Assembly (NCBI RefSeq): GCF_021869535.1
Contig: NW_026262701.1
Span: forward strand, 4,464,001 to 4,528,000
Length of the DNA: 64,000 nucleotides
DNA from: Mytilus californianus
Lineage: Eukaryota
Direction: 5' to 3'
A program made the translations under genes and the position numbers. Positions within the stretch are counted from its first letter, which is position 1, and every line of letters begins with the position of its first letter. Below the pieces are notes generated by a model. That model was not told where the DNA came from, ran no database searches, and saw only the letters and a list, made by a program, of their open reading frames with translations. Shown here piece by piece: positions 16,601 to 52,715 of the stretch.

Positions 16601-17429
16601 GACCTCTGGAAATAAACTTAGAATTTATCGATTATTTAAACCAAATTTTGCTAAGAAAGGGATTTCTAACATAAACCAAAGCTTTACATGTTAACAGAAA
16701 ATGCATCTCATCTTCTATTTCCTCATTACAGAGTTTTGAGCCATACTTATTGAAATTACCATATCTTCAGAGATGTGTTTTAACAAGATTTAGAATTGGA
16801 GCTCACAGACTTGAAATAGAAAAAGGTCGTTACTTTAATATAAAACTAGAAAATAGAATATGCAAACTCTGTAATGAGGAAATAGAAGATGAGATGCATT
16901 TTCTTTTAACATGTAAAGCTTTGGTTTATGTTAGAAATCCCTTTCTTAGCAAAATATTTAGTGAAAATATTTCAAAAATTGATAACAAATCTCTTTTTAT
17001 TTGGTTAATGGTAAATGAAGATAAAAACATTTTGATAATAATTTGTCAATTATTAGAGGTTTTAAATAAAAATAGGAATACAATATTAAATTAGATAACT
17101 TTATATAGAGTTATAGATATATATGATCATATATGCATTTACGATAGTTATTATTTACATCTAATTAATAATTAGTATGCTATGAGGTGTGCTGTCAAAT
17201 AAAGGGTCCAAAATAACAAACAATGGGTCATATTATATTATTACAAATTACTTATTTCAGTTACTTTGATATTGTATATTAATCAATTAAATCAAAATTA
17301 ATCATGTTATATAATTTACTTTACTTTTATATTATGTTTGAAATTATATTGTAATTATTCTGCTAATTTTGGGCGCCGTGATTAGCAAATAAAATATTTG
17401 TTTGTTTGTTTGTTTGTTTGTTTGTTTGT
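13648..17429 (+). mobile_element. RTEX-like LINE, near full-length ORF2 (APE endonuclease + RT + C-terminal Zn finger), decayed, with (TTTG)n tail
   Basis: Motifs SWNING, LMETHC, GDFNART, FVDFRRAFDTV, GVRQGDDLSP, LLYADDLVL, GELGRYPL and HRLEIEKGR..CKLC..EDEMHFLLTC. AATAAA at 17388 is followed by (TTTG)8 at 17397-17428. Clade assignment rests on motif memory only. Confidence 0.85.
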
Positions 17430-19650: not shown

Positions 19651-20825
19651 AAATAAGGTAATGGACTGCAATTTTTTTGTATCAGAATATTACCATGTTT
19701 CATGATATAATGACTAATTAACAAAATAATACGCAAGAGAACAATCTATGATAATTAAATGCAACACATTGTCATTTCTCTGTTTGATTGCCAGATTGTT
19801 TGTTAGATGGAGGATATCTCTTTTAAAACATGCATATGTAAAAAACAAAAAGAATAACCAGATAGAAAACTATCCACCGTAGTAGTCAGCTATTAAAGGC
19901 TTCAACATAAAAAAAGAATTTTAAACGAAAAAAAAAAAACAACAGTCTGCTTTATTATTACACCAAAAAAGAGAAACCAATATTACAGACAGCAACCAAC
20001 GATGATAAATGAATAACAAGTTGCTAACTTGGGACAGGCAAATCAAATGTAAAATGTTTTTATGTTTGAGACCGCTGACAATGGTGTAACAGCACAACGT
20101 AATAACACATTTCTTAAATTAGTCTCAGTACGTAAGATATAACTCATTATTTAGCTCAAAACGTTTTGGTATCCTTTTGTAATTGATCATCTCCTGTCAT
20201 CCTTTTTATTGGGTTTTTTTTTCTTTTCGTTTTCATTTTTTTTTTTTTTAATAAATCATTAATGAAGTGGATTCAACGTTAATCAAATGTTTTCGCAGTA
20301 ACTGAAATTTAACTTTTAAAACATGTTTTGGTTAAATCTTGTTAAAATGATTCATTCCCATTACCTTTTGGTGACCATTTACGTATTACGTAAATAATTC
20401 GATGTAACATCTGTTGAAAATGTTATTTTTAAATTAGATGACTAATAATACGCTCCAAGGAAAAAAAACTAACTTTATCAAACAGTTAACAAAAAGGGAA
20501 ATTAATAAACATTTTCCATTCAAAGCTATACACTGATTTCCGAGATTTTAAGACTCAATCGATTAAATGAAAGAAGGGTAACTTGAAAGTGAAAGTGGAT
20601 CGATCAACCTTGCTGAAACGTATTCGAGATAGTTTTAACCAATCGTTGTATCTTATTAACGGTAAAATGAATTTATAACTAATCTTTTTATCGTATTTGT
20701 GGTGAAATTAACTTATAAGGATTCGGTGTATCGTAGTTATGGTGAAGGGAACCAATAACGAATCGGTGTATCGAAACTGTGGTGTAAGGAGCTGCTCACA
20801 AACAGGTGTATAGAATCTGTTGTAT

Positions 20826-21281
20826 TGTGACGGGATTGCTTCCCTTCATTAGTAGATACTTAGTCAGCCGTAAGCGGTTGAGCTAAGGAAGTACTTCTTT
20901 AGCTCAGTCGGTATACGCGCTGCCTTGTAACACAGAGGTCCCGGGTTCGAGTCCCGGTGGAGACATACGATTTTGCAAGTAGAATCATGCTCTCCGGTTA
21001 CATTGGCGCCCAACAATAAAAACCCATGGTAGTTAGAGAGGATTTCTAGTTAGGGTATGTGTGTGAGAGTCATAATGGTATGATGACTCTTGAGGTGGGA
21101 GAAGTGTGACGGGATTGCTTCCCTTCATTAGTAGATACTTAGTCAGCCGTAAGCGGTTGAGCTAAGGAAGTACTTCTTTAGCTCAGTCGGTATACGCGCT
21201 GCCTTGTAACACAGAGGTCCCGGGTTCGAGTCCCGGTGGAGACATACGATTTTGCAAGTAGAATCATGCTCTCCGGTTACA
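20826..21281 (+). mobile_element. Intact 456-bp TRIM with a tRNA-like sequence in both LTRs (Helenus-type)
   Basis: LTR1 20826-21002 and LTR2 21105-21281 are 177 bp, appear identical and run TGTGAC...GTTACA. PBS TGGCGCCCAAC at 21004-21014, PPT GAGGTGGGAGAAG at 21092-21104, and 4-bp TSD GTAT at 20822-20825 and 21282-21285. Confidence 0.95.
20893..20965 (+). promoter_or_regulatory. tRNA(Thr-UGU)-like Pol III internal promoter in LTR1 (second copy 21172-21244)
   Basis: A box TAGCTCAGTCGG, loop CTTGTAA and a perfect T-arm CCGGG-TTCGAGT-CCCGG (B box). The acceptor and D stems pair poorly. Confidence 0.8.
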
Positions 21282-22129
21282 GTATAATGAAATGCTAGTA
21301 ATAACGATTCGGTGTATCGCATCTGTGGTTTTGCATAAACTACCTGTATCCAATAATTTCATATCTCATTCTTGAAGAATAGTAAAAAGTACCATTTAAA
21401 CTAATAAAAATGACTGTTGCTTTCAATTAGTATTCATTTTGTACAAACCACAAAATCCGGATTGTCCATACTAATCTCCATGCAATGCCATATATTAATT
21501 CAAATATTACAGCTAGTTACAAAGTCAAAATACTTTCTTCAGATGATGAAGGCAAAGATATTGGACACTTCGGACATTAAATATGTAAAAACCACAGCTG
21601 TAAAGTTGCATTCATCTATTAAAAAAGTGACCTATGTCACTTGTGAGGAGTCATTTCCACAAATAGTCCTTTCGAACAGAAAATGGAAAATTAAATATAT
21701 TTAATATAATAAAAGATAGAAACTATAAAATGAAGCACTATTGAAATGTTGATGCATGAACTGGCAAGAAGGTGAACACTACTAAATTTACACAGGCGAA
21801 TATGAATTCCATCTAAATTTAGCCTCAAAAGGGCTTCTTGTTTCCTTAGATAGACACCTTGAACATTGAAAATGCTTCTTATTCCCACATATAAACTTAC
21901 TTCATAAATAGTACAAACTAAACCAGATAGTTATTGATTGATTGTGTCTTGGGAAATCCTAAGTGATACATTAAGGGTAGTTCACACTTGATTCAATGAA
22001 TGCGAAAGGTTAAAACAAATACAAATGAACTTTGGTTCTCGTACTAGGAACAACAAAATTATTTATTTTGTAAAAATTATTTCCGTACTCTATGTATACC
22101 TTTTCTGAATATGTTATAGATATTTAAAA

Positions 22130-24940
22130 TAGGCGCCAACCTTCACCCCACCTGAAACAATAGTGCAACACCACAACACAGAAAGAGCCACTATAAAATA
22201 TCAATTGAAATGGCTTAACTCAATCAAAAGACATATTAACAAAACAAGTGAACATACATAAATTTGATCTATGACACAATGTAAATACAAAATTAGGGTT
22301 AAATGTAAAACAATATCAGAAAGACACCCATAACCTTGGACAAAATGCCACCAAATAAAACAACGTACACAGGTAAATAAAAATAATTTTGTTGTAAGGT
22401 ATACATGGAGTACGGAGATAATTTTTACAAAATAAATAATTTTGTTGTTCCTAGTACGAGAACAAAAATGAATATTCATCGTCATACTAAACACGTATCA
22501 AAGGTAGTATATATTAAAAATAGTGAGACTAGATACAACACTGAATAAGTAAACATTTAATAACAAAAATACATTACAAATTGCATCAACAGGTCAAATT
22601 AACATGAAAGTACGATTTGAGAGTACTCGCAGTTACTGAAAGCTAGTTAAAAGCCAAAAACAATTAATAATAAAAAATCATGCATCAGAGACTAAAATCA
22701 ACTAAAACACATCCCAGGGATTTAGTGTTTTAACGTCATGGACAGTCAAAGAAAACATGACTTATGCAATGCCAAAATAAAAGTATCGACAGGCAGTAGG
22801 ATAGTTAGTAGTTAATCTGTTAATAAATATGTATAATGTAATATATAGATAGAGTAATCTCTATATAGAAAATGAACGTGGATGTGTATTTATACATCCC
22901 AAAAAAAACCTTTGAAAAGAATACAAGTTTAGTTATGTTTTAATTTGCTGACGACCAAATCGATATTTGTGCCAATGTAAACTATATTCAAAGATCTAAT
23001 TACAACATTGGTAAGATAACCTTTAATAATAAGTTTGTTTAAAGGTTCGATGAGTTTACACGGATCACATAGTGATTTCCGCGCTTTTAGTACAATATTA
23101 CCGTAAAATTTAGGATGTGAAATACCGTTTTTAATAAGTTTTCTACAGGTACAGCCAAATTTACTAATCAAATCTTTGTATAAAGAATTTAGTAAAAGTT
23201 TTTAGTAATTTATGGTAACAAAATCCCTGACTTAATAATTTACCAGTGATGAATTGATTACGTTCGTTAAAATCTATGACATCACTACACACACGGGCAT
23301 AACGAACGAGTTGGGATATATAAACACCGTATGATGGAGCCAAAGAAACATCGCCGTCTAAAAAAGGAAAATTAACAATAGGGAATGAAAAATCGTCTCT
23401 TTTGACGTAAATTTTAGTATGGGGTTTCCCTTTAAAAATTGAAATGTCTAAATCTAGAAAAGGACAACTACTGCTGTTTACGTTAGATTTATTTAAAGTA
23501 AGTTCCTTTGGATACATTTTGGTAGTATATTTAGAGAGCTCTGGATTATTTAACGAAAAAATATTATCAAGATAACGGTAGGTATTGTTGAATGTATCAA
23601 CCAAATGTAACAATGACGTCTTTACTGAGTTTGGTCATAAACTGAGATTCATAGCAATACAGGAATAAATCTGCTATTAAAGGGGCGCAGTTAGTGCCCA
23701 TAGGAATACCTACTACCTGTCGATACATTTTATCGCCGAAACGTACATATATGTTGTCCAGGAGAAAATTTAAAGGTTCAGTCATATCTTCACATTTCCA
23801 GTAAGTGTATCTAGCATACTTTCCTTTTTCGTTACAACAAATAAATTTGCAATGAGATTTTTCAAAAGACCATTTAATTAAAAAAATATGAAAACTTTTT
23901 CTTGATAAGATTGTGTGGAAGTGAAGTGTAGAGAGTAGAAAAATCATAACTGTCAACAGAATTAAAAGGACCATCAAAAGCACGTATTTTATCTAAAACC
24001 TCTAATGAATTTCTAACACTCCAAAAATAATTGATACCAAAAGTTATTAACAAGTCCTTTGATAGTAGTAAAGGAGGTAGTTAGAAGCACTGACAGATTA
24101 GTAGTAGAACACTTATAAGATACGGAGATGAAACGGAATTTAAATGGTTGTTTGTGTAATCTAGGTAACCAGTACATAGTCGGGACTTTCAAATGTTCGG
24201 AAGAGGCTTTAAGTTGGGTAGTGGCAGTGCTATGCTTGTTTACAATTTGACTCTCTGTGGAGCGTACCGACCTGAATGTAGACGAATTGATAATTTAGTT
24301 TTGGAGAACTTCCGTGTAGTATATGCGTCACATCACCACTACATTATTGGCTGCTTTGTCTGCCGGTACGACCACAAACCGCTTTGCGAGTACTTGGAGT
24401 TTATTTTTTATGCTAGAAATAGACATATCATGGTCCCAATTATTAATTTCAGAATTTTCAAAATGAGATTTACGAATATCAACAGTATTCATAATTTTAT
24501 TCAAATAACTGTCTTGAGATTTTTTATCAGGTTTTTCACGTTTACACCAATTTTTACAGTAGGCAGACAAAGCGTCTTTAATGACCTGACGACACTGTTT
24601 CCAATCTATCAAAGATGGAAGACGATATTTAGGTCCTTTCTTAAGAAAAGTTTTGACCTCACGGTCTTCGACAATGTTGAGGTCTCCTGTAATGACATGA
24701 CCATAGGGAACATATCTAAAACTAGATGTTTCACAGTCTCAAGTGGAAGAAGCATTATTTTCTATATTGACGTCTGTTGTAACTGACGTATAATTAAAAA
24801 TCAAACTTCTGCTGGTTTTTTTTTTATAAGAATACGAAATAATAGGTGGTTCTGTATTATCAAAATATGGAGGTATTTGACTTTGGATGGTAGAGTCATT
24901 GAATATATTAGATAAGTTAATAAAATCAATACCTCTATTT
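22130..24940 (-). mobile_element. Naiad Penelope-like element, 3' half: linker (UxC motif), RT and 3' UTR with SECIS
   Basis: Reads NRGIDFINL...[25 protein letters not shown], then PADKAANNVVVM*RIYY, SYDFSTLY, GIPMGTNCAPLIADLFL, YRYLDNIF and KRDDFSFPIVNFPFL. Stop at 22929. It also has frameshifts and one TAA. Confidence 0.92.
22690..22747 (-). promoter_or_regulatory. SECIS element (type 2)
   Basis: Minus strand: AUGAC-GUUAAAACAC-UAAA-UCCC U GGGA-U-GUGUUUUAGU-UGAU. This gives the AUGA/GA kink-turn core, a fully paired 10-bp helix II (two G.U), apical AAA, a mini-stem, and helix I GACUG/UAGUC. Confidence 0.85.
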
Positions 24941-27350
24941 ACCAGACTGAAGCTAGCGAACAATAAGCCAGCGAACAATAAGAAATACGCGCCAAACTGA
25001 TCACGCCTAAACACCGAAGACTTATTTTAACATAAAACATCCTTTGAAATCTGATGACAATCATTTCCAGTAGGAAGACGAAATGCTATACATTTTCACA
25101 AAGACAAAATTGATTTTTTTATTTATATAGATATTTAAAACAACATAATTTTTCTTAACAGCCGAGCATCTCTTATAGGATTTTCAAAATTAATTTTACA
25201 ATGTAGCTACTCCTCTCCCTTTTGATTACCTTTGATTACAAACGTCTGTCTTTATAATAATGAAAAACATGATAAAAGTAGACCATACTTATCTAGTGTA
25301 AAGATGAAATTAAATCCACATACTGATATATACCGTTTTTGGAACGTCAAGTACAGAATTTTGCATCCAGAATTATTAGTTGAAGTAAAAGCTAATAAAT
25401 CTCCACAGTGTTCGTTTTGGTACGATTGAACAATTTATTTATTACATTTCAATAGGAAATGTGTTTTATGTGACAGTGACACACAAGTAGCACGATATAT
25501 GAATTGATGAAGATATTAGCTAATTTAACCGACAAAATCTTCAAATCCAAGATTATTACAGCTTTTCCAAAAAGGCAAGTCCCTTGCACTGATTCGAATT
25601 AACAAGAAAAGGTTGGAATCACAACAATACGAACTATTTCAGTTTCACATTTGAACAATTATCGGGGAACGGTCCAAAATTGGGGTATGGTTACCCGACC
25701 CCCTCCCTACTTTAATTCATAAAAAAAAGTCTCTACGGCAAAACTTTTGTCCACACTTGATACAAATGATAGGCATTTGCCTAGGGTTGCCTAGACCCAA
25801 AGACCCAGGTGGGTACAGTCACAGATCGTCCATAACTGAGGTCCAAAGTTAGGGTATGGTGACCCGACCTTTTCCTACTTTAATTTATAAAATAAAGTCC
25901 TTACGGCAAAGCTTTTGTCCACACTAAATACAAATGATAGGCAATTGCCTAAAGTTGCCTTGACCCAAAGACTCAGGTGGGTAAAGTTACGGATCGTCCA
26001 CAACTGAGGTCCAAAGTTGGGGTATGATGACCCGACCCCCTCCCTACTTTAATTCATAAAAAAGTCCTTACGGCAAAGCTTTTGTCCACACTAGATACAA
26101 ATGATAGGCAATTGCCTAAGGTTGTATGGAACCAAAGACCCAGGTGGGTAAAGTTGCGAATCGTCCATAACTGAGGTCCAAAGTTAGGGTAGGGTGACCC
26201 AACCCCCTACCTACTTTTATTCATAAAAAATCCTCACGACAAAGCTTTTGTCTATACTAGGTACAAGTGATAGACAAGGCCCTGAAGTTGCCCGGACTAC
26301 ATGGCCCAGGTGGGTAAATTCACGGAACTTCTTTACCAGAGTTCCAAAGTGTGGGTATGGAGACCATACCCTCCCTAACTTTAATTCGTAAAAAAGTTCA
26401 TACGTCAAAGCTTTTGTCCACACTAGGTACAAATGATAGGCAATTGCCTAAGGTTGCCTTGATCCAAAGAGCCAGGTGGTTAAAGCTACGGATCTTCCAC
26501 AACTGAGGTCCAAAGTCGGGGTATGATGACCCGACCCCCTCCCTACTTTAATTCATAAAAAAGTCCTTACGGCAAAGCTTTTGTCCACACTAGGTACAAA
26601 TGATAGGTAATTGCCTAAGGTTGTATGGAACCAAAGACCCAGGTGGGTAAAGTTACGAATCGTCCATAACTGAGGTCCAAAGTTAGGGTAGGGTGACCCA
26701 ACCCCCTCCCTACTTTTATTCATAAAAAATCCTCACGACAAAGCTTTTGTCCATACTAGGTACAAGTGATAGACAAGGCCCTGAAGTTGCCCGGACTACA
26801 AGGCCCTGGTGGGTAAATTCACGGAACTTCTTTACCAGAGTTCCAAAGTGTGGGTATGGAGACCATACCCCTTCCTAACTTTAATTCGTAAAAAAGTTCA
26901 TACGTCAAAGCTTTTGTCCACACTAGGTACAAATGATAGGCAATTGCCTAAGGTTGCCTGGATCCAAAGAACCAGGTGGTTAAAGCTACGGATCTTCCAC
27001 AACTGAGGTCCAAAGATGGGTATGGTGACCCGACCCCTCCCTACTTTAATTCATAAAAAAGTCCCTACGACAAAGCTTTTGTCCACACTAGGTACAAATG
27101 ATAGGCAATTGCCTAAGGTTGCCTGGACCCAAAGAGCCAGGTGGTTAAAGCTACGGATCTTCCACAACTGAGATCCAAAGTCGGGGTATGGTGACCCGAC
27201 CCCCTCCCTACTTTAATTCATAAAAAAGTCCCTACGGCAAAGCTGTTGTCCACACTAGGTACAAATGATAGGCAATTGCCTAAGATTGTCTGGACCCAAA
27301 GACGCAGGTGAGTAAAGTTTAAGATCGTCCACAACTGAGGTCCAAAGATG

Positions 27351-27984
27351 GGTATTGACATGAATAGCAATTATATGGTCATTTTTATAAATTTCCTGTT
27401 CACAAAATTATATTTTTTTTGAAAAACTAAGGATTTTCTTATCCCAGGCATAGATTACCTTAGCCGTATTAGGCACAACTTTTTGGAATTTTGGGTCCTC
27501 AATGCTCTTCAATTTTGTACTGGTTTGGCTTTATAACTATTTAGATCCGAGCGTCACTGATGAGTCTTAGAAAGACGAAACGCGCGTCTGGCGTATTAAA
27601 TTATAATCCTGGTACCTTTGATAACTATTTATACCACAGGGTCGATGCCACTGCTGGTGGACGTTTCGTCCCCGAGGGTATCACCAGCCTAGTAGTCAGC
27701 ACTTCGGTGTTGACATGAATATCAGTTATATGGTAATTTTAGTAAATTTCCCGTTGACAAAACATTAAATTTTTCGTAAAACTAAGGATTTTCTTATCCC
27801 AGGAATAGATTACCTAAGTCGTATTTGGCACAACTTTTTGGAATTTTGGGTCCTCAATGCTCTTCATCATTGTACGGGTTTGGATTTATAACTATTTAGA
27901 TCCGAGCGTCTCTGATGAGTCTTAGGAAGACGAAACGCGCGTCTGGCGTATTAAATTAAAATCCTGGTATCTTTGATAATTATT
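27351..27984 (+). ncRNA. Non-LTR retrozyme insert (~1.8 x 355-nt monomer) with two type I hammerhead ribozymes
   Basis: GCGTCA-CTGATGA-GTCT TAGAA AGAC-GAAAC GCGC GTC-TGGCGT. Cores are at 27557 and 27912 (355 nt apart), with predicted cleavage after 27588 and 27943. Confidence 0.9.
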
Positions 27985-28557
27985 AAGGTTGCCTGGACCC
28001 AAAGAGCCAGGTGGGTAAAGTTACGGATCGTCCACATCTGAGGTCCAAAGTTGGGGTATGGTGACCCGACCCCCTCCCTTCTTTAATTCATAAAAAAAGT
28101 CCTTACGGCAAAGCTTTTGTCCACACTAGATACAAATGATAGGCAATTGCCAAAGGTTGCCTGGACCCAATGACCCAGGTGTTTTAAGTTACGGATCGTC
28201 CACAGATGAGGTCCAAAGTTGGGTTATGGTGACCCGACCCCCTCCCTACTTTAATTCATAAAAAAAAGTCCCTACGACAAAGCTTTTGTCCACACTAGGT
28301 ACAAATGATAGGCAATTGCCTAAGGTTGCCTGGACCCAAAGAGCCAGGTGGTTAAAGCTACGGATCTTCCACAACTGAGGTCCAAAGTCGGGGTATGGTG
28401 ACCCGACCCCCTCCCTACTTTAATTCATAAAAAAGTCCCTACGGCAAAGCTGTTGTCCACACTAGGTACAAATGATAGGCAATTGCCTAAGATTGTCTGG
28501 ACCCAAAGACCCAGGTGAGTAAATTTAAAGATCGTCCACAATTGAGGTCCAAAGATG

Positions 28558-29144
28558 GGTATTGACATGAATAGCAATTATATGGTCATTTTTATAAATT
28601 TCCTGTACACAAAATTATATTTTTTTTGAAAAACTAAGGATTTTCTTATCCCAGGCATAGATTACCTTAGCCGTATTTGGCACAACTTTTTGGAATTTTG
28701 GGTCCTCAATGCTCTTCAATTTTGTACTGGTTTGGCTTTATAACTATTTAGATCCGAGCGTCACTGATGAGTCTTAGAAAGACGAAACGCGCGTCTGGCG
28801 TATTAAATTATAATCCTGGTACCTTTGATAACTATTTATACCACAGGGTCGATGCCACTGCTGGTGGACGTTTCGTCCCCGAGGGTATCACCAGCCTAGT
28901 AGTCAGCACTTCGGTGTTGACATGAATATCAGTTATATGGTAATTTTAGTAAATTTCCCGTTGACAAAACATTAAATTTTTCGTAAAACTAAGGATTTTC
29001 TTATCCCAGGAATAGATTACCTAAGTCGTATTTGGCACAACTTTTTGGAATTTTGGGTCCTCCGAGCGTCTCTGATGAGTCTTAGGAAGACGAAACGCGC
29101 GTCTGGCGTATTAAATTAAAATCCTGGTATCTTTGATAATTATT
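28558..29144 (+). ncRNA. Second retrozyme insert (duplicate) with two hammerheads and a 47-nt deletion
   Basis: Hammerhead cores at 28764 and 29072 (308 nt apart). The sequence is offset 1207 bp from the first insert. Confidence 0.9.
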
Positions 29145-30099
29145 AAGGTTGCCTGGACCCAAAGAGCCAGGTGGGTAAAGTTACGGATCGTCCACATCTG
29201 AGGTCCAAAGTTGGGGTATGGTGACCCGACCCCCTCCCTTCTTTAATTCATAAAAAAAGTCCTTACGGCAAAGCTTTTGTCCACACTAGATACAAATGAT
29301 AGGCAATTGCCTAAGGTTGCCTGGACCCAATGACCCAGGTGTTTTAAGTTACGGATCGTCCACAGATGAGGTCCAAAGTTGGGTTATGGTGACCCGACCC
29401 CCTCCCTACTTTAATTCGTAAAAAAAAGTCCCTAAGGCAAAGCTTTTGTCCACACTAGGTACAAATGATAGACAATTGCCTAAGGTTGCCTGGACCCAAA
29501 GACCCAGGTGGGTAAAGTTACGGATCGTCCATAACTGAGGTCCAAAGTTAGGGTAGGGTGACCCAACCCCCTCCCTACTTTAATTCATGAAAAAATCCTT
29601 ACGACAAAGCTTTTGTCCATACTAGGTACAAGTGATAGGCAAGGCCCTGAAGTTGCCCGGACTACATGGCCCAGGTGGGTAAATTCACGGAACTTCTTTA
29701 CCAGAGTTCCAATGTGTGGGTATGGAGACCATACCCCTTCGTAACTTTAATTCGTAAAATATTCCGTATGACAACGCTTTTGTCCATACCATGAACAAAT
29801 GATAGGCAAAACAATGAAGATGTCCAGACTAGATAACAACCATAAGCTATGGTTTCAGTTTGGCTAGACAAAAGGCTAAGTTTGGTGAAATAACTTCTCT
29901 TTTGACTATCCCCTTTCAAGTTCATTTGATAAAAAAATGCTTACGACAAAAATTTTGTCAACATCATATACAAAAAACTATGCAATGGACTAAGGCTGCC
30001 CGGACCTGAAGGTCCTATTCGGTTAGGCCTACACCAGAGGTCAAAATTTTTGGTTCTGGTCAGACTACCCTCGCTTAAATTTAATTACAATTAATTTGG

Positions 30100-31150
30100 A
30101 GACCCTTAAATGATTTAATGATATATTTTTTTATGAATAAAGGATATTTCCAAACGAATCAAGGTTATCTTCAACGAAATTAAGGTTGACATTAAACGAA
30201 TTACGAATATCACTAATTCATTAAAGGATGTCAATAATAACAATGATGTTGCATTATGGGATTTCAATAAATGCATTCTTTAAAGATATTTTAAATCATA
30301 TATTGATATACTTAAATGGAGTATTGTTGCATTTAGGTATATCAATTAATATACATGTATAATTTTATTCCTTAAATGATGTATTGATATCCTCAAATGA
30401 ATACGAACACGGATATGAATTAAGGAAATTGATTCAGCAAGAATTTGCGATATCCTGAAATAGTAAAAGGATATCCTGAATTATGTATGGATATCCTTCA
30501 ATGATTTATTGTATCCTTTACGGAATTATGTGTGTGTAGGTATATCTTTAAGTGTATAATTATTTTTTTTTAAATTATTTATTGGTATCCTAAAACGAAT
30601 AAAGGATATCCACAAGTCACTTCATCATTTAAAGATAGCTTTATATAATATAATAATACCCACAAATTAAGGAGAACGGATAGTACCTAATCAGGAATTT
30701 GTGATATCCTGAAAAAATTAAAGGATATCGTGCATTGATTTAGTGTATTCTAAAAATTAATAAATCCTGTAAGGAAATAGGAATATCCTTAAATCACATA
30801 ATGTGTTCATTATTCCATTACAGCATATTCATAATTATCTTCAATAGGGTTTATGATTATTCATTTTCAAAAAATATTTTAGATGGTAGATGAGTACTGT
30901 AAATCCTTAAATGAAAATTTATTTTTTCAACTTTAAATATTTTTAGATATTTTTTATCATTAATGATATCCTAATTCAAACAGATTAGGGTATTACATTT
31001 TGATTGTATAATATCCTTTAATTCTTTATTGATATCCCAAAGAAAAGCTCTACAGTTGTAAGTCTGTCTGTAATCGATGTTGACAAAGCAACTTTTACGT
31101 AGTTTTTATCAATTTAATGATGGATATCCTATATTGATTGAAGAACATCT
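30100..31150. repeat. Degenerate AT-rich repeat built on (A)AGGATATCCTT-like palindromic cores
   Basis: Many variants are present, e.g. TAAAGGATATTTCC, AAAAGGATATCCTG, TGGATATCCTTC, TAAAGGATATCCAC and GGAATATCCTTAA. Confidence 0.6.
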
Positions 31151-31814
31151 TGTGATCAAATGATATCCATAAGGTATATTTTTAAATGAGATTGGCGTTT
31201 ATTGGACAGAAGGGTTAAAGAGAACGTCCGAAAATTCCAACGCAAAGGCAGTTGGAGATGTTCGGAAATGATAAGTATCTAGAGATTCAACTGAACAATT
31301 TTAAATTGCTAGCATGAAGTCTCCATTGCACTTCTACAACAACTCACACAAGAGGATCAATTTTCAACGTGAACAAGGATCCGGATTACTTTATATCAGT
31401 TAATCATCATGAAGATTTGGATCAGAAGTTGATTAACCGAAATGACAAGTACAAGAAAAGGGAGAACGAGTTTAAGTTCGATGTTACCAGTCTCACTGAA
31501 GGTGATGTATTGAACGGATATATCAATTTTAAAGTATTCTTTTACACAGGTGAAGACAACAGTTATAGTGTATCCTTCGAGGATATCAAGGAATGTGAGT
31601 ACAAGGCATGCGGACCGCATAATTCTGACAAACGCCCAAAACTGATTACTGCTGGGTGTGAAATACTTATCACGTCTCTAAACATCGCAAATAGCAGAAC
31701 ACATCAAGTTGTAGACGGGATGGACATAAACAATCATAAACATGACAATCATCGATCAATAAGGGTCCATTTCACTCTTACACGGGCTCAAATCCTTTGT
31801 GGAAGATTGTCAAA

Positions 31815-32600
31815 TGTCAATTTTTACCAAACAATGCAGTACAAACATCACACACCTTCGCGCCTCTGCTATAACGTCAAATGTCAAAGGGTGTTATCAA
31901 CAGAATGAGTTCGAACGATCCAACATCTAGAAGATTTACCGCACCCAGAAATACATATGAATTATAACCAATGAGACAAGAAACGATTAGACTCTAGAAT
32001 AGACTGTCACATTTACCGAAAACCATTTAAAAATAACACCGTCGTGATCACGATCATCTTACTGAAAAAATATTTCGGGATCCACTGAACAATCGTAATT
32101 TAGAGTATCACCTCCTGAGATTTGTGCCCATCGTCTTTAATTTTTCTAGTAGAGCGGGTTCGATGCATATATCTGTTCTTAAAGAACCGGCACTTGTCAT
32201 GATGGGACATATTGAGGTTATTTGAAGGAAACCTCAACTGCATATCAAATTGCAAATGCCAAGTACATCGTCTTCTCGTTATAGTGGGGACTACATATGA
32301 GATGCATCATTCGTTCAAGTTAATGGTGAACTCGCTGGAAACTGACAAAGAAGTTGGCAAAGGATCAGTTAAAATATGTGAAGATGTATGGTGAACACTA
32401 CAAAAACCAAACGAAAAACATGCTTATAAAGTACTTGACATGTTCGAGTTTAAAACTATCACAACCTTATCTAGAGTCGACGTGATGATGTCTTACATAT
32501 TTGAAAACTTCATGCATTTTTGTTTGAACCCGCATGGTAGTACGGGACTGGTTAACGACGCAGAGCACAGGACCACAGGGGTCAAACTTGAAAATCAAAA
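31815..32600 (+). pseudogene. Polinton/Maverick protein-primed DNA polymerase B remnants (heavily deleted)
   Basis: Frame-broken motifs in the expected order: QYKHHTPSRLCYNVKC; DCHIYRKPFKNNTV-RDHDHLT-K-FR...NLEY..RFVPIVF; GNLNCISN...SFKLMVNSLET; KHAYKVLDMFEFKTI-HNLYLESDV..IFENF..TGVKLE. Confidence 0.8.
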
Positions 32601-32707
32601 TTAAAACACTAAATACATTGTATGCAAATCTGACTGAGATGGATTCAGCTACTTATTTATTTATGATCACAGAAAGTTAATCATCTATCGAATGTTTTCA
32701 GGGGGAC

Positions 32708-33010
32708 GATGTATACCTATACGAGCCTCTATCCGGTAATCCCGTTACCAGTTCTAGTTCTGATGTGGAGATACGAAACAGCATCGATACGCAAGACTGT
32801 TCGTCAGATAGTTATATCATTGTAGATGGTCGAATTCAGAAGAACGACGAGATGGCGCATGCTGATGCAGATTAAGCGACACTCATGAACAATGGTATAT
32901 TGTAATTACTCAAAAGCATCGACTAAAAACTGCCTGAACAGCATTTATGCTCTACCATTTGTTGCTACTACCATCTTAGGACTGATTATGGGTCAAAGCA
33001 TAAACTGACT
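32708..33010 (+). pseudogene. Polinton/Maverick major capsid protein N-terminal remnant
   Basis: YEPLSG...EIRNSIDTQD...SYIIVDGRIQK...AHADAD*ATLMNNGIL*LLKSID*KL then ATTILGL. This matches the remembered Polinton MCP pattern YEP.TG..EIRI.I.TQD..SY..IEG...TL.NNG.M.LF..I.Y.L..GQATTMLGL. Confidence 0.75.
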
Positions 33011-33379
33011 TTCGTGCACTTTTCCGACATTAATGCAGCGCTACGATCAGTCGCCGTCAAGAAAGTGACAAAGACTGTCACGAGCAAAATGTGTTGGTTC
33101 TCTTCTCGCGTCATTCCCTCCGACGACAACATGGAGAAAAAGATGAAACTGTCCATGATAACAAGACAAGTAAGACTCAATCTGATTAAAATCAGATCTT
33201 TGATTTTGCTCCGTTTGATTTGTTTTTCGCTCGTGTAAGATATGAATATACCCCAAATAATGTGTTCATTTTCGGATAACCTTTTAATGCAAGTTCTAAA
33301 TCAGCCAATCATTTCGAATTACACTCTGGCACTTTGATTATAATTTTCTCCTAAAATCATATATTAAAGCAATTTCTTT

Positions 33380-33592
33380 TACAATTACATGTGTTTTCAC
33401 ATGAGTGCTTACATCTCATACTTTCAAAAGAACTTGAGATTGAGGATACTACCGAAAGCAGAAGGTCTAATTCATACATTGACCTTTTCTACGATAATGA
33501 CACAGACGGAGGACGACTTCAAACTAGAATATATGATAAACGTGTTGATTTCAACTTTCCAAATTTCATCAGTAACATACCCCTTTCCAATC
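33380..33592 (+). mobile_element. Naiad/PLE RT C-terminal fragment (different subfamily) abutting the right TIR
   Basis: SKELEIEDTTES..SYIDL...LQTRIYDKRVDFNFP. Confidence 0.75.
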
Positions 33593-33808
33593 AAAAATCA
33601 ATTTCGTCGTGAAAATGTGTAGCATTTCGTCTTCCTACTGGAAATGTTTGTCATCAGATTTGCAAAGGACGTTTCATGTTAATATAAGTCTTCGGTGTTT
33701 AGGCGTGATCAGTTTAGCGCGTATTTCTTATTGTTCGCTGGCTTATTGTTCGCTAGCTTGCTACACCCTATTGTTCGCTGGCTTATTGTTCGCAAGCTTG
33801 AGTCTGGT

Positions 33809-35400
33809 CCTCTATTTATATATTTTAATTTAAGAAAATGCCGTTTGTGATTTTCAGGTTTATCGATCATAGGAAACAGCCTGTGATGAACAAAGGCTGT
33901 AATAATACGGGTGTATTCATACAACGGGCAAAAAAATGAAATTTTATCCCACTCCTGAAAAATAGCATATAATTTACTCCAGTTTGCATAATACTTGATG
34001 TCTACCATTATTTTTTATATAGATAACAGATCAGCAAGTGTATAATTTATACGATGTTTAATGCGTTGATTACGGTTTTTGCGTTTACCATGAGACCTAT
34101 TATTTCTTAGTCGTTTATCGACAATATTAATGACATCGACAGAAGTTTTAGATATGTTCCCCTGTCCCAATATTTTGTCATTGAGACCGAGAGGATAAAC
34201 TGTTTGAAGTCTTTTTATCCAAAATAGTTCGCGAATCAAATTGCTTGTGTGATTGTCCTGGTTGTTTCTGAACGTGGTTGGAATTTTATAAATTTTAGAT
34301 TATGATTATGCTTATCTAAATGTTGGTTTATCAAACTTCTGTAATATTCTCGTCCCGTCTGTCCCACATATTGAATACCACACTTAGGCTGGGTTCAAGT
34401 TACCACATATATAAGGTTTTGAGTTTTTCAGGTAATGTCACAGGAAAAGGAGAGTGAAAAAGCTCTCCCGTTCACAGTTGACCTAACAGTATTTTGTGAA
34501 GTTTATCTAAAACAGGTAAGTAATTTTTTGGCATTGCACGGGGAAATTTTTTTTAACAATCTGGCTGCAGAGGCATTACAAATACGTTTGTTTAATCACG
34601 TGGATATCCTAGAAGTTATGTTGTTATTTAATTTCTTTCCATTACGTAAAATCGTGATAATTTAAATACGGGTATAGGCAAAATATAAAAGACCGGAGGT
34701 TGTAACATAGAATAAGGATCACACTCACGGAATAAGAAATAATTGGCAAAGCAGTAAAAGAACTCTTACAAAAACTGTTATAAAAAGCCCGACGTAAAGA
34801 CTTAAGTAATACAAAACAGACATATAACAAACACAGGACAAAAACAGAGATCGTCAGAAATCTAAGTAAAACCATAGCAGGGGGCAATAATAGAAATAGC
34901 AAGCGTGGATGAGTATTTATACATCCAAACACTATAATATTTAATTAACAATTAAGAACAAAGATATAATAAACATATGAAAGCTCTCTAACAGGCAAAC
35001 AACCCATAATTGTAAAATATAAGGGCATACACCACAAGCACGGGGACACATTCTACTGTATCCACACAGCACGAGTAACAAACCCTGCAGTAAATATATA
35101 TATAAGAAGATGTGGTATGAGTGCAAATGAGACAACTCTCCATCCAAGTCACGATTTGTAAAAGTAAACTATTAAAGGTAAAAGTACGGCCTTGGCTCAC
35201 ACCGAACAGCAAGCTATAAAGGGCCACAAAAATTACTAGTGTAAAACCATTCAAACAGGAAAACCAACGGTCTAATCTATATAAAAAACGAGAAACAAGA
35301 AACACTTATGAACCACATCAACAAACGACAACCACTGAACATCAGGTTCCTGGACCAGGACAGGCGCAAACAAACGCAGCGGGCCCAAACGTTTCAAATA
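33809..35400 (-). mobile_element. Naiad Penelope-like element, 5' half: upstream tail copy (pseudo-LTR), 5' UTR and N-terminal GIY-YIG endonuclease
   Basis: CDIT*KTQNLIYVVT*TQPKCGIQYVGQTGR (34442-34350) and RELFWIKRLQTVYPLGLND. The EN lies N-terminal to RT. A copy of the family 3' tail sits upstream at 35100-35400. Confidence 0.88.
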
Positions 35401-35989: not shown

Positions 35990-37880
35990 CAGACTCATAT
36001 ATTGAATTATTATCTCTATTATTTCTGTTGCTGCTTCCGGTTATTTCAGCTCGATAATCAGAATAATAGATTTCTTCGGATTCCCAGTAATTATCTAATC
36101 TATTTATAAACGAATTTATAGATGGAGCTTTTGTTATTTTATCTGGTAATTTATTCCATAATTATGGCAATTCTTACTGTAAAGCTATTGTTCCTCAGAC
36201 TTGTTTTAAATCGTTGGTGAATAATTTTGTTACTATTAACTCTTGTGCTATGCCTATTTTCGGTGTTTGAAATTAGTTTGAGAAATGTACTAGTTTCTGG
36301 ATCATATTTTCCGTTTAGTATCTTGTATGTCTCAATCATGTCTCCTCGGACCCTTCTATATAACAATGTTTGGCAGCTTAAGTTTTTTCAGTCTTTCTGG
36401 ATAACCTGATTTGTTGAATCCAGGTATCTGGCGTGTCGCCCTTTTTCTACATTTTCGATTTTGTCAATGAGTTTCTTTTTGAAAGGTGCCCATACTGAAC
36501 TAGCAAAGTCTAAGTGTGTTCTCACTAATGTTTTGTATAGTGGTATGAAGATCTTTGCATTTAAATTTTTAAATGTTCTTCTAATTGCCGCAAAGATTGA
36601 GTTAGCTTTGTTCACTTTTTCGCATATGTGTTTTTCAAAGGTTAAATCTTCGTCTATAACTACTCCAATATCCTTCTCTTCACTGCATTTGATAATATCA
36701 TGACCTAATAGATTGTAAGTTGTGCTGTCATCTCTTACCCCTCTGCTTATATTTATATGTTTACATTTTTCTGCTTGGAATTTCAAGAGCCATGTATTAC
36801 TCCATTGTTCTAAATTTTTTAAGTCGTTTTGCAGTATAGCTTGGTCTGCTTTGTTTTCAATGATTTTAAAGATTTTAGTGTCGTCCTCAAATAAGTAGGC
36901 ATCCGATGTGACGCAATCTGGCAAGTCATTTATGTATAGAACAAATAACAGGGGGCCTAGTACTGAGCCTTGGGGTATTCCAAATGTTACATCTTTCCAC
37001 TCTGATGTTTCCCCATTCACTGAAACTCTTTGTTTTCTATATGACAGAAAATCTGTTATCCAGTCTAAGATTGGATTTATTATCCCAAATTTCTCAATTT
37101 TCTTTACGAGTCGCCTGTGTGGTACTTTATCAAAGGCTTTCATGAAATCAGTGTATATGCAATCAACCTCATGGCCATTATATATAGCTTCTGTCCATTT
37201 ATCTATTACCTCTAGTAGTTGTAGTGTTGTTGATCTTCCAGAAATAAAACCGTATTGTTTATTTGAAAATAATTTATTTCTTTCATATAGCTAATAATAT
37301 GTTCTCTTATAATTTTCTTCATAATTTTGCTAGCCACTGATGTAAGGCTTACTGGTCGGTAGTTTTTTGCTTGTGGTTTATTCCCTTTTTTGAAGACTGC
37401 ACTCACTAGGGCGTTTTTCCAATCCTTTGGGACTACTTTTGGGGTTAATGATTGGCTAAAAATTATGCCTAGTGGTTCAGCTATACCTTCCTTGACTTCA
37501 AACAACAGTCTGGGGTGTAGGTTATCAGGGCATGGAGATTTATCTGTTTTTATTTTCTGAAGGTGCTTCAATACTAAATCAGTGCCAATATTTAATTCCT
37601 GTATTTTGTATTGTATTGTGATATGTTTAGGTTCCGGGATATTGCCTTGGGGTTCATTTGTAAATACACTAATAAAATACTCTGATAATATTTCAGCTTT
37701 TTGTTTGTTATCATCCGTTTTTTCAGATTTTACATCTTCCGAGTCAACATGTAGGTCACCTATACCTTCTATTGTGCTAACATACAGATTGTTTTCAGAG
37801 AGTATAGTCCATATTATTCAGTTTGATACACATATTCCTGTTTGAAATATTTACCTGTTTTTAAAATTTACATTAATTAA
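35990..37880 (-). mobile_element. 5'-truncated CR1-clade LINE (RT), decayed
   Basis: KSPCPDNLHPRLL, NYRPVSLTSV, KAFDKVPHRRL, GIPQGSVLGPLLFVLYINDL, LFEDDTKIF and DIGVVIDEDLTF. Confidence 0.9.
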
Positions 37881-41100: not shown

Positions 41101-41272
41101 AAATATCTATAAAAAATGGATATAAGCAAACACAATTAATAGGTAGTTTTCCTGATTGTCCAACATAAACTTTCTTGATTTTCTACCGTTTTACCTGCAA
41201 TTATAAAAAATCAGCCAATATGGGAAGACTGCAATTTTGCGGAAATATCAACAACTTCAAACGATATCGGGT

Positions 41273-41600
41273 GGTCAGCTTATGTTTTTTAGGTTAATCA
41301 TTCTCATCTGACCTTGATCTCATTTCCGTGCTCAAGTGGTCAGTTTATGTTCCATAAGATAATCATTCTCATCTGACCTTGATCTCATTTCCACGCTCAG
41401 GAGGTCAGCTTATGTTTCATAAGATAATCATTCTTATCTGACCTAGATCTCATTTCCACGCTCAAGTGGTCAGCTTATGTTTTATAAGATAATCATTCTC
41501 ATCTGACCTTGATCTACTTTCCACGCCCAAGTGATCAGCTTATGTTTCATAAGTTAATCATTCTCATCTGACCTTGATGTCATTTCCACGCTCAAGTGGT
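41273..41600 (+). repeat. 65-bp tandem repeat x5
   Basis: Unit GGTCAGCTTATGTTTCATAAGATAATCATTCTCATCTGACCTTGATCTCATTTCCACGCTCAAGT starts at 41273, 41338, 41403, 41468 and 41533. Confidence 0.92.
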
Positions 41601-43289
41601 AAGGTTGTGGTCATAGGTATATCTGTACATACTTTCTTTGATTCATTATGACTGGATTGACGACAGCATTCCGGTCCTTATAGACATGCCAGGCTAATGA
41701 TCAATCTATATTTATCTACGTGTATGTAGCCTTAGATGATCTTTTTTTTTTTTGTTGTTTTAATTATGTTGTTGGATGGCTTATAGATGTTTATCTTCCG
41801 TAGACGATTACAAGTTTTCATATTTGTACTCTGTTAACTTTAAACTAAATTATGCAATTTAGATCCATGCTGGTTAAAACCGTTTCCCCGTAGCATATTT
41901 TTAAAAAGAAAACATTTAAACAAAGTCCTAACAAAACAGAAAATATATTTTACTTTCTTTGTTCAATCAGTTGTGAAAATTATGTTTCTTTAAATGTGCA
42001 AAAGGTAAACATGGTTCGACACACTTAATGAACAGAATTTATGGTTATTAGTCTGCACCAAATAACACTGATATATTTGTGGTTAATTATGTAACAAATG
42101 ATGTTCTAGAATGACTTCGTGTTTTCAAATATGCCTGCATCTTGGTGGTGGTTGTAGTGGTGGTGGTGGTGGTGGGGATTGATATGTCGTTAAAAAACTA
42201 TGATGATTATCGAATCTTTGTGACTGTGACTATTCAATATAAACACAGAAACAACTGTTGTGCGCATGCAAATCATATCTTGTTTTATTATTATTTAAGC
42301 CTAATGCCAGAAATAAACAATGTTCTGTGATGATTTTAATTCATGCATTGATACGGCATATAAATTCATGATGCAAAATCTGTCCACGCACTTAACAGAC
42401 CAGATTACTAAGACGGTGTTTTTGAAAGTTCTTTCTTTTTCATGATTTGCCTTAACTTTAAATACGATTTTCAGTTTATAAATTATGTAATTATAATAAG
42501 GCCAATGTTGCAACTTCTTTTGAGAAAGTTTCCCTTACAAAATTTAGGCTGCTCTGTTTAAGCTTTTGGGGTTAAATGGTTTTTATGAGTGGTTCAGTGA
42601 TTTATTCATTTGGCTTTCAACATCTTTTTTTTAAGGTGCCATTTGATAGTTTACCAGAAACAAATGTCTTGCTCAATGAAAAAGAAAGCTTACGTTTATG
42701 TAATTTTTGATTTATTTTTAAACAGTGACTGTTTCTGTTTCACAATTTAAAATAAAACATAACAACACAACATAAGAACAAAGTTCTTTAACTTGTTTCA
42801 GTTCGTTAGACAGCACTCTTTATATAGCTTAAAACTCTTCGGTATCATTTTGTAATTTGCCATCCCCCGCCACCCTTTTTATTGTTTTTTCTTCTTTCTA
42901 AACAATTAATTATGTGGATTCAACGTAAATTTACCTTTTAAAACATGTTTAATTTAACTCTTGTTGAAATGATTCATTCACGTAATCTGTTGGTGACCGT
43001 TATCTTGATAATTCGATGCAACATCTGTTGTAAAATGTTTTAAATTAGATGACTAATCAAACGCTCCAAGGACAAAATAAACTTTATCAAACAGTTTACC
43101 AAAAGGGGAATTCAATAACATTTTCAAATAAAAGCTATAGACTGATAGATTTCTGAGATTTTAAGACTCAAACAATTGAATGAAAGAAGGATAAAACGGA
43201 AGTGGAAGTGGATCGATCGACTTTGCTGAAACATATACAAGTTAGTTTTAAGAAATCGATGTATCGTATCAACAATGAAATAAACTAAT

Positions 43290-46110: not shown

Positions 46111-46487
46111 TATCTGTCGTATAATAAGCTAAAAACAAATCGATCTGTCGTATAATTGTTGGAGATAATACCATAGATGATAAAAGAACTCCTAGGTTCG
46201 TTCGAGTGTAGGTTCGGATATATATTTTTTTTTTCCTCAAATACAATTGTTAACCATTCTTCAATTAACATTCAAACAAATAGTTCATTACACCACAATT
46301 GTGATTCCGCTCAATTCACCACAGTTTCGATACAGTTGAGATCTGACACCTTTTTCTTTGTTCAATACAATTGGTCATTATTGAAATTGAAATTAATTTT
46401 GATTAAAACAGGTGGTCAGTATTTACACGGACATTTGCAAAGTCCCGGTTCTTCCAAACAACTTTGATTCAAATGCCTTACACACAT

Positions 46488-52487: not shown

Positions 52488-52715
52488 GTGTTCAACTCGA
52501 ACAGATAAAAGATTAATTTGTGTTCAACTCGAACAGATAAAAGATTAGTTTGTGTTCAACTCGAACAGATAAAAGATTAATTTGTGTTCAACTCGAACAG
52601 ATAAAAGATTAATTTGTGTTCAACTCGAACAGATAAAAGATTAATTTGTGTTCATCTCGAACAGATAAAAGATTAATTTGTGTTCAACTCGAACAGATAA
52701 AAGATTAATTTGTGT
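52488..52715 (+). repeat. 32-bp tandem repeat x7
   Basis: GTGTTCAACTCGAACAGATAAAAGATTAATTT at 52488, 52520, ... 52680. Only two single-base variants. Confidence 0.95.

What the first reader, a model, noticed from the sequence alone, without database searches (positions are those of the whole stretch)
24941..33808. 8.9-kb TIR-bounded cargo element carrying satellite, ribozymes and viral-type genes
An exact 9-bp TSD and ~180-bp TIRs containing short AGCGAACAATA repeats are Mutator/foldback-like traits. No transposase is recognisable. The interior is a 4.4-kb satellite with hammerhead retrozymes, a GATATC-rich repeat, Polinton pPolB and capsid remnants and a foreign Naiad RT piece. If it moved as a unit it is a Pack-MULE-like vehicle that disperses satellite DNA and ribozymes in an animal genome. 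Alternatively, some cargo arrived after insertion.
Basis: partly seen in the sequence, partly recalled or inferred. Interest (0 to 1): 0.8.

Follow-up and report, generated by a model that had tools for sequence, protein, structure and literature searches.

The report
Satellite-carrying inverted-repeat transposon in mussel
This is one 8.9-kb copy of a non-autonomous DNA transposon in the California mussel genome, filled mostly with a 167-bp satellite and nested hammerhead-ribozyme repeats; the claimed virus-type genes could not be found, and repeat-carrying mobile elements are already known in bivalves.

Summary
The window is Mytilus californianus, from a HiFi assembly. The element's structure is real. 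It spans 24941-33808 (8,868 bp). Its inverted ends are 178 and 216 bp long and 93.7% identical. The 11-mer AGCGAACAATA occurs only in those ends, and an exact 9-bp duplication (CCTCTATTT) flanks them. A marine-metagenome contig carries the same terminus and 11-mer repeats on an unrelated interior, so the boundary is real and a family exists. Inside are about 17.5 monomers of a 167-bp satellite, with decayed monomers at its right edge. One 1.8-unit block of 355-bp repeats, each unit carrying a type I hammerhead, lies in the array. A recent 1.2-kb tandem duplication (99.35% identical) doubled that block. There is also a GATATC-rich AT-rich stretch, an orphan 196-codon open frame and a roughly 170-bp reverse-transcriptase fragment next to the right end. 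I found no transposase, protein-primed polymerase or capsid. The "Naiad" label for the RT fragment is unverified. My best reading is a non-autonomous cut-and-paste element with Mutator/foldback-like traits and a layered interior. Whether it carried its cargo when it moved cannot be tested here. This is a new member of a known kind, of modest interest.

The parts
24932..24940 (.). Left copy of the 9-bp target-site duplication (CCTCTATTT)
   Evidence: Read directly from the sequence; identical to 33809-33817.
24941..25118 (+). Left terminal inverted repeat, 178 bp. It starts ACCAGACT and holds two copies of the 15-bp subterminal unit with the 11-mer AGCGAACAATA (24950-24982).
25119..25670 (.). 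Unique AT-rich internal sequence between the left TIR and the satellite
   Evidence: No repeat elsewhere in the window. No monomer-like remains.
25671..29809 (+). 167-bp satellite array, about 17.5 monomers in three stretches with a partial 499-bp higher-order period. Two hammerhead-bearing blocks interrupt it.
   Evidence: Tandem Repeats Finder: 10.1, 3.4 and 4.0 copies at 82-89% matches. Self-comparison. GC is 0.40-0.47 against 0.29-0.36 in the flanks.
27351..27984 (+). Retrozyme-like block 1: 1.8 units of a 355-bp repeat, with type I hammerheads at 27551-27594 and 27906-27949
   Evidence: The two units are 89.6% identical to each other. Short shared bases mark both junctions with the satellite, and about 93 bp of a monomer are missing.
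28558..29144 (+). Retrozyme-like block 2, a copy of block 1 with hammerheads at 28758-28801 and 29066-29109. It is 99.7% identical to block 1 apart from one 47-bp deletion.
27017..29417 (+). Recent tandem duplication with a period of about 1.2 kb. It comprises the hammerhead block plus about 3.4 monomers, and the two copies meet near 28220.
   Evidence: There are 8 mismatches over about 1,240 aligned bp (99.35%), with mismatch density rising to 13-19% on either side.
29810..30092 (+). Decayed satellite monomers at the right edge of the array (68-74% identical to a monomer)
   Evidence: Local alignment scores of 23 and 38 against null maxima of 15 and 17; alignment A3.
30100..31170 (.). AT-rich stretch (GC 0.24-0.29) rich in GATATC and GGATATCC. 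It holds a 45-bp direct repeat and a 31-nt inverted pair.
31318..31905 (+). Orphan open stretch of 196 codons, with no Met before about residue 135
   Evidence: It is longer than any of 400 Markov nulls. It has no relatives. AlphaFold pLDDT is 35.
31906..33414 (+). Unique sequence with a run of short plus-strand open pieces and no recognisable family
33415..33585 (+). Fragment of a reverse-transcriptase gene, covering the part after catalytic motif C. It is cut on both sides and ends within 8 bp of the inner edge of the right TIR.
   Evidence: It matches 100 of 120 members of an abundant invertebrate RT family, the best at 58% over 65 aa, E 3e-16 in the local database. It matches two RT copies in the window. 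Family members carry Pfam RVT_1.
33593..33808 (-). Right terminal inverted repeat, 216 bp. It holds four 11-mer copies (three exact, one with one mismatch) in about five 15-bp units (33727-33799).
33809..33817 (.). Right copy of the 9-bp target-site duplication
   Evidence: Read directly from the sequence.
23167..24738 (-). Neighbour: a decayed copy of the same RT family on the minus strand, spread over five open pieces (at least four breaks). The insertion site lies about 1 kb upstream of its RT motif A.
   Evidence: It is colinear with the copy at 2834-4329.

Best explanation
This is one inserted copy of a non-autonomous cut-and-paste (class II) transposon. A transposase encoded elsewhere would bind the ends, most plausibly at the short subterminal AGCGAACAATA repeats. 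It would excise the whole TIR-to-TIR segment and insert it at a staggered cut 9 bp wide, which leaves the CCTCTATTT duplication.

The 9-bp duplication, the TIRs of about 200 bp and the subterminal short repeats fit the Mutator-like group (MULE, Rehavkus, foldback type). With no transposase to examine, that assignment is inferred, not shown.

The interior looks like a layered history, not a set of captured genes:
1. An internal sequence of the element was amplified into a 167-bp satellite. The decayed monomers at one edge point to this.
2. A dimer of a mussel-type hammerhead retrozyme was inserted into the array once.
3. A 1.2-kb tandem duplication then doubled it very recently.
4. A roughly 170-bp reverse-transcriptase fragment beside the right TIR is filler, or a leftover from a repair or rearrangement event.

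Shown: ends, duplication, array, ribozyme motifs, the recent duplication, the RT fragment, the absence of recognisable genes.
Inferred: the transposition mechanism, the superfamily, the order of the older events.
For: - TIRs and an exact 9-bp TSD.
- The 11-mer is confined to both ends, in inverted orientation.
- A second, independent terminus in a marine-metagenome contig starts at the same ACCAG, carries three 11-mers, then diverges into non-coding sequence.
- No direct internal copy of the end, so no pseudo-LTR.
- The TIR does not continue the RT reading frame.
- No transposase or other family in any open piece.
- MULEs have 8-11-bp TSDs and long TIRs. Rehavkus has a 9-bp TSD, 26-400-bp TIRs and a minisatellite before the 3' TIR. 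MULEs occur in molluscs (PMC6446971).
- Identity falls in layers: duplication 99.35%, TIR arms 93.7%, higher-order satellite units 89%, monomers 82%.
- The assembly comes from 45x HiFi reads averaging 13.4 kb, longer than the element, and the window has no N.
Against: - There is only one copy in the window, and only one related end elsewhere.
- No autonomous partner is known, so the superfamily rests on TSD length and end architecture alone.
- Merlin-type elements reportedly also make 8-9-bp duplications. This is from my own knowledge and was not checked here.
- Penelope-like retroelements can also produce inverted ends and duplications of variable length (PMC8557442), and an RT fragment does lie next to one end.
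- The identity layers are a weak clock. TIRs may be under constraint, and satellite monomers may have been divergent when they were amplified.
Confidence: 0.65

Rival explanations
1. The element is a Pack-MULE-like vehicle that moved with its present cargo, and its family spreads the 167-bp satellite and hammerhead units to new loci.
For: The array lies wholly between the TIRs and occurs nowhere else in the 64 kb. Satellite monomers (82%) and higher-order units (89%) are more diverged than the TIR arms (93.7%). If all evolve neutrally in place, the array predates the last insertion. MULEs are known to pick up foreign fragments (PMC6446971), and an RT fragment sits beside one TIR.
Against: The only relative found shares about 55 bp of terminus and nothing of the interior. 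The doubling of the ribozyme block is far younger than the TIR divergence, so the present content is not what moved. No host-gene fragment was found, and the 196-codon frame has no parent anywhere. The divergence argument is weak.
Confidence: 0.15
2. The structure is an insertion unit of a Penelope-like retroelement or its non-autonomous derivative. In this reading both outer ends are 3' ends in inverted orientation, and the 9 bp is one of that class's variable-length duplications.
For: Penelope-like insertions often carry an inverted, 5'-truncated copy that makes inverted repeats around the whole unit, with duplications of variable length (PMC8557442). Such elements dominate Mytilus genomes, and retrozymes are thought to depend on them. 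An RT fragment points towards the right end, about 280 bp from it, similar to the distance from that motif to the end of the RT copy at 2834-4329.
Against: There is no pseudo-LTR or partial tandem copy of the end inside. The TIR sequence does not continue the RT protein in any frame, tested against 120 family members. The TIR shows no DNA similarity to the ends of the RT copies in the window. Short repeats in both arms are typical of transposase binding sites. The target is not a microsatellite. The related metagenome terminus has no coding sequence within 730 bp.
Confidence: 0.12
3. The element derives from a Polinton-type virus-like element and keeps remnants of its polymerase and capsid genes.
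Against: The duplication is 9 bp. Polintons reportedly make 6 bp, which is from my own knowledge. Pfam (which includes the protein-primed polymerase family), PDB and the large protein search found no polymerase, capsid, integrase, protease or ATPase signal.
Confidence: 0.03
4. The structure is a chance resemblance or an assembly artefact.
For: None was found. Read-level support was not checked.
Against: The exact 9-bp duplication, 170-bp inverted arms and an independent matching terminus argue against chance. HiFi reads are longer than the element.
Confidence: 0.02

Closest known systems
Non-autonomous Mutator-like elements, including Pack-MULEs and the related Rehavkus group
   Same: 9-bp target duplication, TIRs of about 200 bp, short tandem repeats near the ends, no transposase of its own, and foreign DNA between the TIRs (PMC6446971).
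   Different: No transposase or autonomous partner links it to the superfamily. The foreign piece is a retroelement fragment, not host exons. Rehavkus has been reported only from arthropods and annelids. The interior is dominated by a 167-bp satellite.
Tandem-repeat-bearing mobile elements of bivalves (pearl, DTC84, the M. galloprovincialis element, Helentron-N)
   Same: Non-autonomous mobile elements whose core is a short array of repeats about 160-170 bp long, linking transposons and satellites in bivalves (PMC3879986; PMC7492417).
   Different: Those have short (about 11-bp) inverted motifs, an AA 'duplication' and usually a microsatellite tail, and are considered Helitron-like. Here there are 178/216-bp TIRs and a 9-bp duplication.
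Tetris, a foldback transposon of Drosophila virilis
   Same: A DNA transposon whose own internal or terminal repeats were amplified into a satellite (PMC4079207, title and abstract).
   Different: Different phylum and unrelated sequence. In the present element the array lies between the TIRs, not within them, and carries a nested ribozyme repeat.
Metazoan non-LTR retrozymes of mussels
   Same: Tandem units with a type I hammerhead. The 355-bp unit falls in the 350-390-bp range reported for M. galloprovincialis. GC is low (PMC7229834).
   Different: There are only 1.8 units per block. Rfam scores sit just under the gathering threshold. Expression as circular RNA is unknown. The units are nested in a satellite inside a DNA transposon.
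Penelope-like elements with inverted terminal arrangement
   Same: Inverted ends around the whole unit, a flanking duplication, and hammerhead and RT material in the neighbourhood (PMC8557442).
   Different: No pseudo-LTR, no RT gene continuous with the end, and a target that is not a microsatellite.

Membership tests
Mutator-like elements (MULE / Rehavkus / foldback type) | Target-site duplication of 8-11 bp | tested here: met
   Exact 9 bp. A 10-bp reading is possible only with asymmetric ends.
Mutator-like elements (MULE / Rehavkus / foldback type) | Long terminal inverted repeats (tens to hundreds of bp) | tested here: met
   178 and 216 bp, 93.7% identical.
Mutator-like elements (MULE / Rehavkus / foldback type) | MULE-type DDE transposase in the element, or in an autonomous partner with the same ends | tested here: not met
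   None inside. A partner cannot be sought without the genome, so membership remains open and the element would have to be non-autonomous.
Pack-MULE-like gene-capturing elements | Fragments of host genes between the TIRs | tested here: not met
   The only identifiable fragment is retroelement RT. The 196-codon frame has no parent gene in 1.84 billion proteins.
Pack-MULE-like gene-capturing elements | Several copies that carry the same cargo to different sites | not testable with these tools
   No other copy in the window. One related end in a metagenome has a different interior.
Polinton / Maverick | Protein-primed family B DNA polymerase | tested here: not met
   No Pfam hit in any open piece. 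No PDB hit.
Polinton / Maverick | Capsid proteins, integrase, protease, packaging ATPase | tested here: not met
   No family hit. Capsid models are sparse in Pfam, so a very decayed capsid cannot be excluded.
Polinton / Maverick | 6-bp target-site duplication (from my own knowledge) | tested here: not met
   9 bp here.
Metazoan retrozymes | Type I hammerhead ribozyme with an intact core | tested here: inconclusive
   Full-length matches at 33.6 and 29.0 bits against a gathering score of 34, E 2e-5 and 7e-4, with the core letters of the model present. On its own, each motif folds no better than shuffles.
Metazoan retrozymes | Head-to-tail units of about 170-400 bp, each with one ribozyme | tested here: met
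   355-bp unit, 1.8 units per block.
Metazoan retrozymes | Expression as circular RNA | not testable with these tools
   No expression data. The excised 355-nt RNA folds with z = -1.4 only.
Naiad clade of Penelope-like elements (for the RT fragment and the flanking RT copy) | N-terminal GIY-YIG endonuclease joined by a CxC linker to a C-terminal RT | tested here: inconclusive
   RT is confirmed (RVT_1 in relatives), and the ORF ends about 100 aa after the matched motif. No credible GIY-YIG was found; one hit at E 0.057 lies on what is RT sequence. The relatives retrieved were limited to 425 aa or fewer.
Bivalve pearl / DTC84 / Helentron-N elements | AA at the termini, short subterminal inverted motif, microsatellite next to the core repeats | tested here: not met
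   The ends are long TIRs with a 9-bp duplication, and there is no microsatellite at the array edge.
Bivalve pearl / DTC84 / Helentron-N elements | Core of tandem repeats about 160 bp long | tested here: met
   167-bp monomers.

The most novel reading that the evidence does not exclude
The TIR family could be a DNA-level carrier for satellite and retrozyme arrays. In that case other copies in Mytilus genomes would hold the same 167-bp array and hammerhead units between the same ends. A cut-and-paste transposon would then seed new satellite loci and give RNA-circle retrozymes a second, DNA-based route of spread in an animal genome.
Probability: 0.12. Interest if true: 0.6.

Novelty: new member of a known kind. 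Interest (0 to 1): 0.3.

Why it matters
Bivalve genomes are known for satellites that travel inside mobile elements, but the documented carriers are Helitron-like. A carrier with long TIRs and a 9-bp duplication would add a second class of vehicle. It would also give a dated example of how an array grows inside a transposon: amplification, then a retrozyme hit, then a recent duplication. As a single copy with no partner and no siblings it remains an annotation-level result. It also corrects the record, because no virus-derived genes are detectable here.

Tried and rejected
- Rfam at gathering thresholds found nothing in the window. The hammerheads appear only in the E-value scan.
- The word-based protein search with the 196-codon frame, and with the right TIR read as protein to fish for other copies, returned nothing.
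- The HMMER search of 1.84 billion representatives gave one hit. It is a summed artefact on a 52-residue tandem-repeat protein.
- AlphaFold on the 196-codon frame gave pLDDT 35, so I ran no fold search.
- Exact-product look-ups for three open frames in or beside the element found no record, so neither the alternate haplotype nor other copies could be reached.
- The scan of bacterial and archaeal genomes for the doubled 11-mer gave two motif-level chance hits.
- No tRNA-like sequence was found.
- I considered a hAT reading (ends starting at CAG, 8-bp duplication) and rejected it, because the flanks then do not match.
- I first read the two hammerhead blocks as an old 92% duplication or as two insertions. 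I rejected that once mismatch positions showed one young 1.2-kb duplication.
- I first took the weak GIY-YIG hit on the RT copy at 2834-4329 as support for Naiad. I rejected it after reading the RT motifs in that stretch and finding RVT_1 in its relatives.
- I did not scan viral contigs, because of the bar on fetching animal viruses by pattern.
Open minus-strand frames on both sides are in the same phase (element plus one duplication is 8,877 bp, which is 3 x 2,959), but each flank piece searched alone hit nothing.


Full report
**Source.** An intronless CBM_21 gene at 58428-59783 matches exactly a gene on scaffold JAKFGE010000005.1 of assembly GCA_021869535.1. That assembly is the Mytilus californianus reference genome. 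It was built from 45x PacBio HiFi reads with a mean length of 13.4 kb, longer than the element. The window contains no N.

**The ends.**
- The inverted-repeat search and a self-comparison give arms at 24941-25118 and 33593-33808.
- A global alignment gives 164 matches and 11 mismatches, or 93.7%.
- The right arm is about 40 nt longer, because a block of the same short repeat is doubled there.
- Both arms start with ACCAGACT.
- They carry 15-bp units built around the 11-mer AGCGAACAATA: two exact copies on the left, and three exact copies plus one with a single mismatch on the right. Apart from one unrelated one-mismatch site at 47303-47313 the 11-mer occurs nowhere else in the 64 kb.
- Immediately outside both arms lies the same 9-bp word, CCTCTATTT.
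- No part of the element recurs elsewhere in the window, and there is no solo terminus.

**A relative.**
- An exact-pattern scan of public metagenome contigs with 27 nt shared by both arms found one 1,467-bp marine contig.
- Similarity to the element begins at the same ACCAG, runs through three copies of the 11-mer, and then stops.
- The 730 bp inside that end are AT-rich and non-coding.
- This fixes the element's boundary independently. It also shows that a family with these ends exists, with at least two kinds of interior.
- A similar scan of bacterial and archaeal genomes gave only chance motif matches.

**The satellite.**
- A 167-bp monomer is repeated about 17.5 times in three stretches, with a 499-bp higher-order period in the first stretch.
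- To the right of the last good monomer, sequence 68-74% identical to the monomer continues to about 30090. The left edge is sharp.
- A decaying edge of this kind suggests that the array grew from sequence belonging to the element. This is an inference.

**The ribozymes.**
- Rfam reports nothing at gathering thresholds.
- An E-value scan finds four full-length type I hammerhead matches, at 33.6, 33.6, 29.0 and 29.0 bits against a threshold of 34.
- They lie in two blocks, 27351-27984 and 28558-29144. Each block is 1.8 units of a 355-bp repeat.
- That unit size and the low GC match the retrozymes described in M. galloprovincialis, which have 350-390-bp units (PMC7229834).
- On its own, each ribozyme motif does not fold better than shuffled sequence. 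The excised 355-nt RNA folds only slightly better than shuffles, z = -1.4.

**One insertion, then a young duplication.**
- The two blocks are 99.7% identical, whereas the satellite beside them aligns at about 92%.
- Mismatch positions resolve this. Over about 1,240 bp there are 8 mismatches and one 47-bp deletion. On both sides the mismatch density jumps to 13-19%.
- So a single 1.2-kb tandem duplication, comprising the block plus about 3.4 monomers, happened recently.
- The element therefore received one two-ribozyme insertion, not four ribozymes.
- Identity falls in layers: duplication 99.35%, TIR arms 93.7%, higher-order units 89%, monomers 82%.
- Read as a rough clock, the array is old, the arms are intermediate and the duplication is young. 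This clock is weak.

**The right-hand 3.8 kb.**
- 30100-31170 is AT-rich. It holds 11 of the window's 23 GATATC sites and 4 of its 5 GGATATCC sites.
- 31318-31905 is open for 196 codons, longer than any of 400 Markov simulations of the region.
- That frame has no Pfam family, no PDB match and no word-search relative. It has no true relative among 1.84 billion representatives.
- Its single-sequence structure model is unusable.
- All other open pieces of 45 aa or more, on both strands, are blank in Pfam. Four were also blank in PDB.
- The claimed Polinton polymerase and capsid remnants are therefore not supported. I had a protein-primed family B polymerase and a double jelly-roll capsid in mind. 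Neither came back as a hit.

**The RT fragment.**
- One piece near the right end matches two other loci in the window at the protein level.
- The better-preserved of these, at 2834-4329, has 2,598 database relatives at E of 1e-5 or lower. Some carry Pfam RVT_1, and one is named a reverse-transcriptase-domain protein of a pearl oyster.
- Against 120 of those relatives, the fragment at about 33415-33585 matches 100, the best at 58% over 65 residues.
- It is cut on both sides and ends within 8 bp of the inner edge of the right TIR.
- The TIR itself does not continue the protein.
- The clade name Naiad could not be checked, because no GIY-YIG domain was detected.

**The neighbourhood.**
- On the minus strand, 23167-24738 is a decayed copy of the same RT family, split over five open pieces.
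- The insertion site lies about 1 kb upstream of its RT motif A.
- The immediate flanks are unique in the window and blank in Pfam.

**Interpretation.**
- The ends, the fixed-length duplication, the inverted subterminal repeats and the lack of any gene point to a non-autonomous cut-and-paste transposon.
- The duplication length and end architecture fit Mutator-like elements (PMC6446971). Membership cannot be claimed without a transposase.
- The main rival is a Penelope-like insertion unit with inverted ends (PMC8557442). It is weakened by three findings: the end is not copied inside the element, it is not continuous with the RT gene, and it does not resemble the RT copies nearby.
- Mobile elements that carry arrays of about 160-bp repeats are well known in bivalves (PMC3879986, PMC7492417). 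A foldback transposon that gave rise to a satellite is known in Drosophila (PMC4079207).
- The finding is therefore a new member of a known kind.

- I used them as search references, but they show indirectly where frames end. This report gives only outer bounds and counts.

Noticed in passing
window 31318-31905 (+): A 196-codon open stretch that is statistically too long for chance, yet has no relative in any database searched and no early Met. It may be a remnant of an undescribed gene of this transposon family, or of something nested in it.
   Followed up: yes
window 30100-31170: AT-rich stretch with a dense cluster of the palindrome GGATATCC/GATATC, a 45-bp direct repeat and a 31-nt inverted pair. 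It looks like an array of binding sites or a decayed small element. No function is assigned.
   Followed up: partly
window 2834-4329 (+), 23167-24738 (-), 50665-51185 (+), 54880-55070 (-): Several decayed copies of one very abundant invertebrate reverse-transcriptase family (2,598 database relatives). Pfam RVT_1 barely recognises it. The clade is undetermined.
   Followed up: partly
window 13836-17091 (+): LINE-like element with weak endonuclease, strong RVT_1 and zf-RVT signals.
   Followed up: no
window 36391-37817 (-): Another reverse-transcriptase gene (RVT_1, E 2e-24), only 22% identical to the LINE-like one.
   Followed up: no
window 43249-46127: Large tandem array with a 40/79-bp period and a 341-bp higher-order unit. 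A related short stretch lies at 20558-20860.
   Followed up: no
window 41271-41600, 49190-49883, 52465-52715, 4402-4737: Further tandem arrays with periods of 65 bp, 17/26/43 bp, 32 bp and 105 bp.
   Followed up: no
window 58428-59783 (+): Intact intronless gene for a CBM_21/CBM53 carbohydrate-binding protein, of the kind found in glycogen-targeting phosphatase subunits. I used it to identify the source genome.
   Followed up: partly
window 11872-13288 against 22029-22779 and 35096-35397: Two different repeat families lie side by side at 11.9-13.3 kb. Each has a separate partial copy, one on either side of the element, about 2 kb and 1.3 kb from it. They are unrelated to the element.
   Followed up: partly
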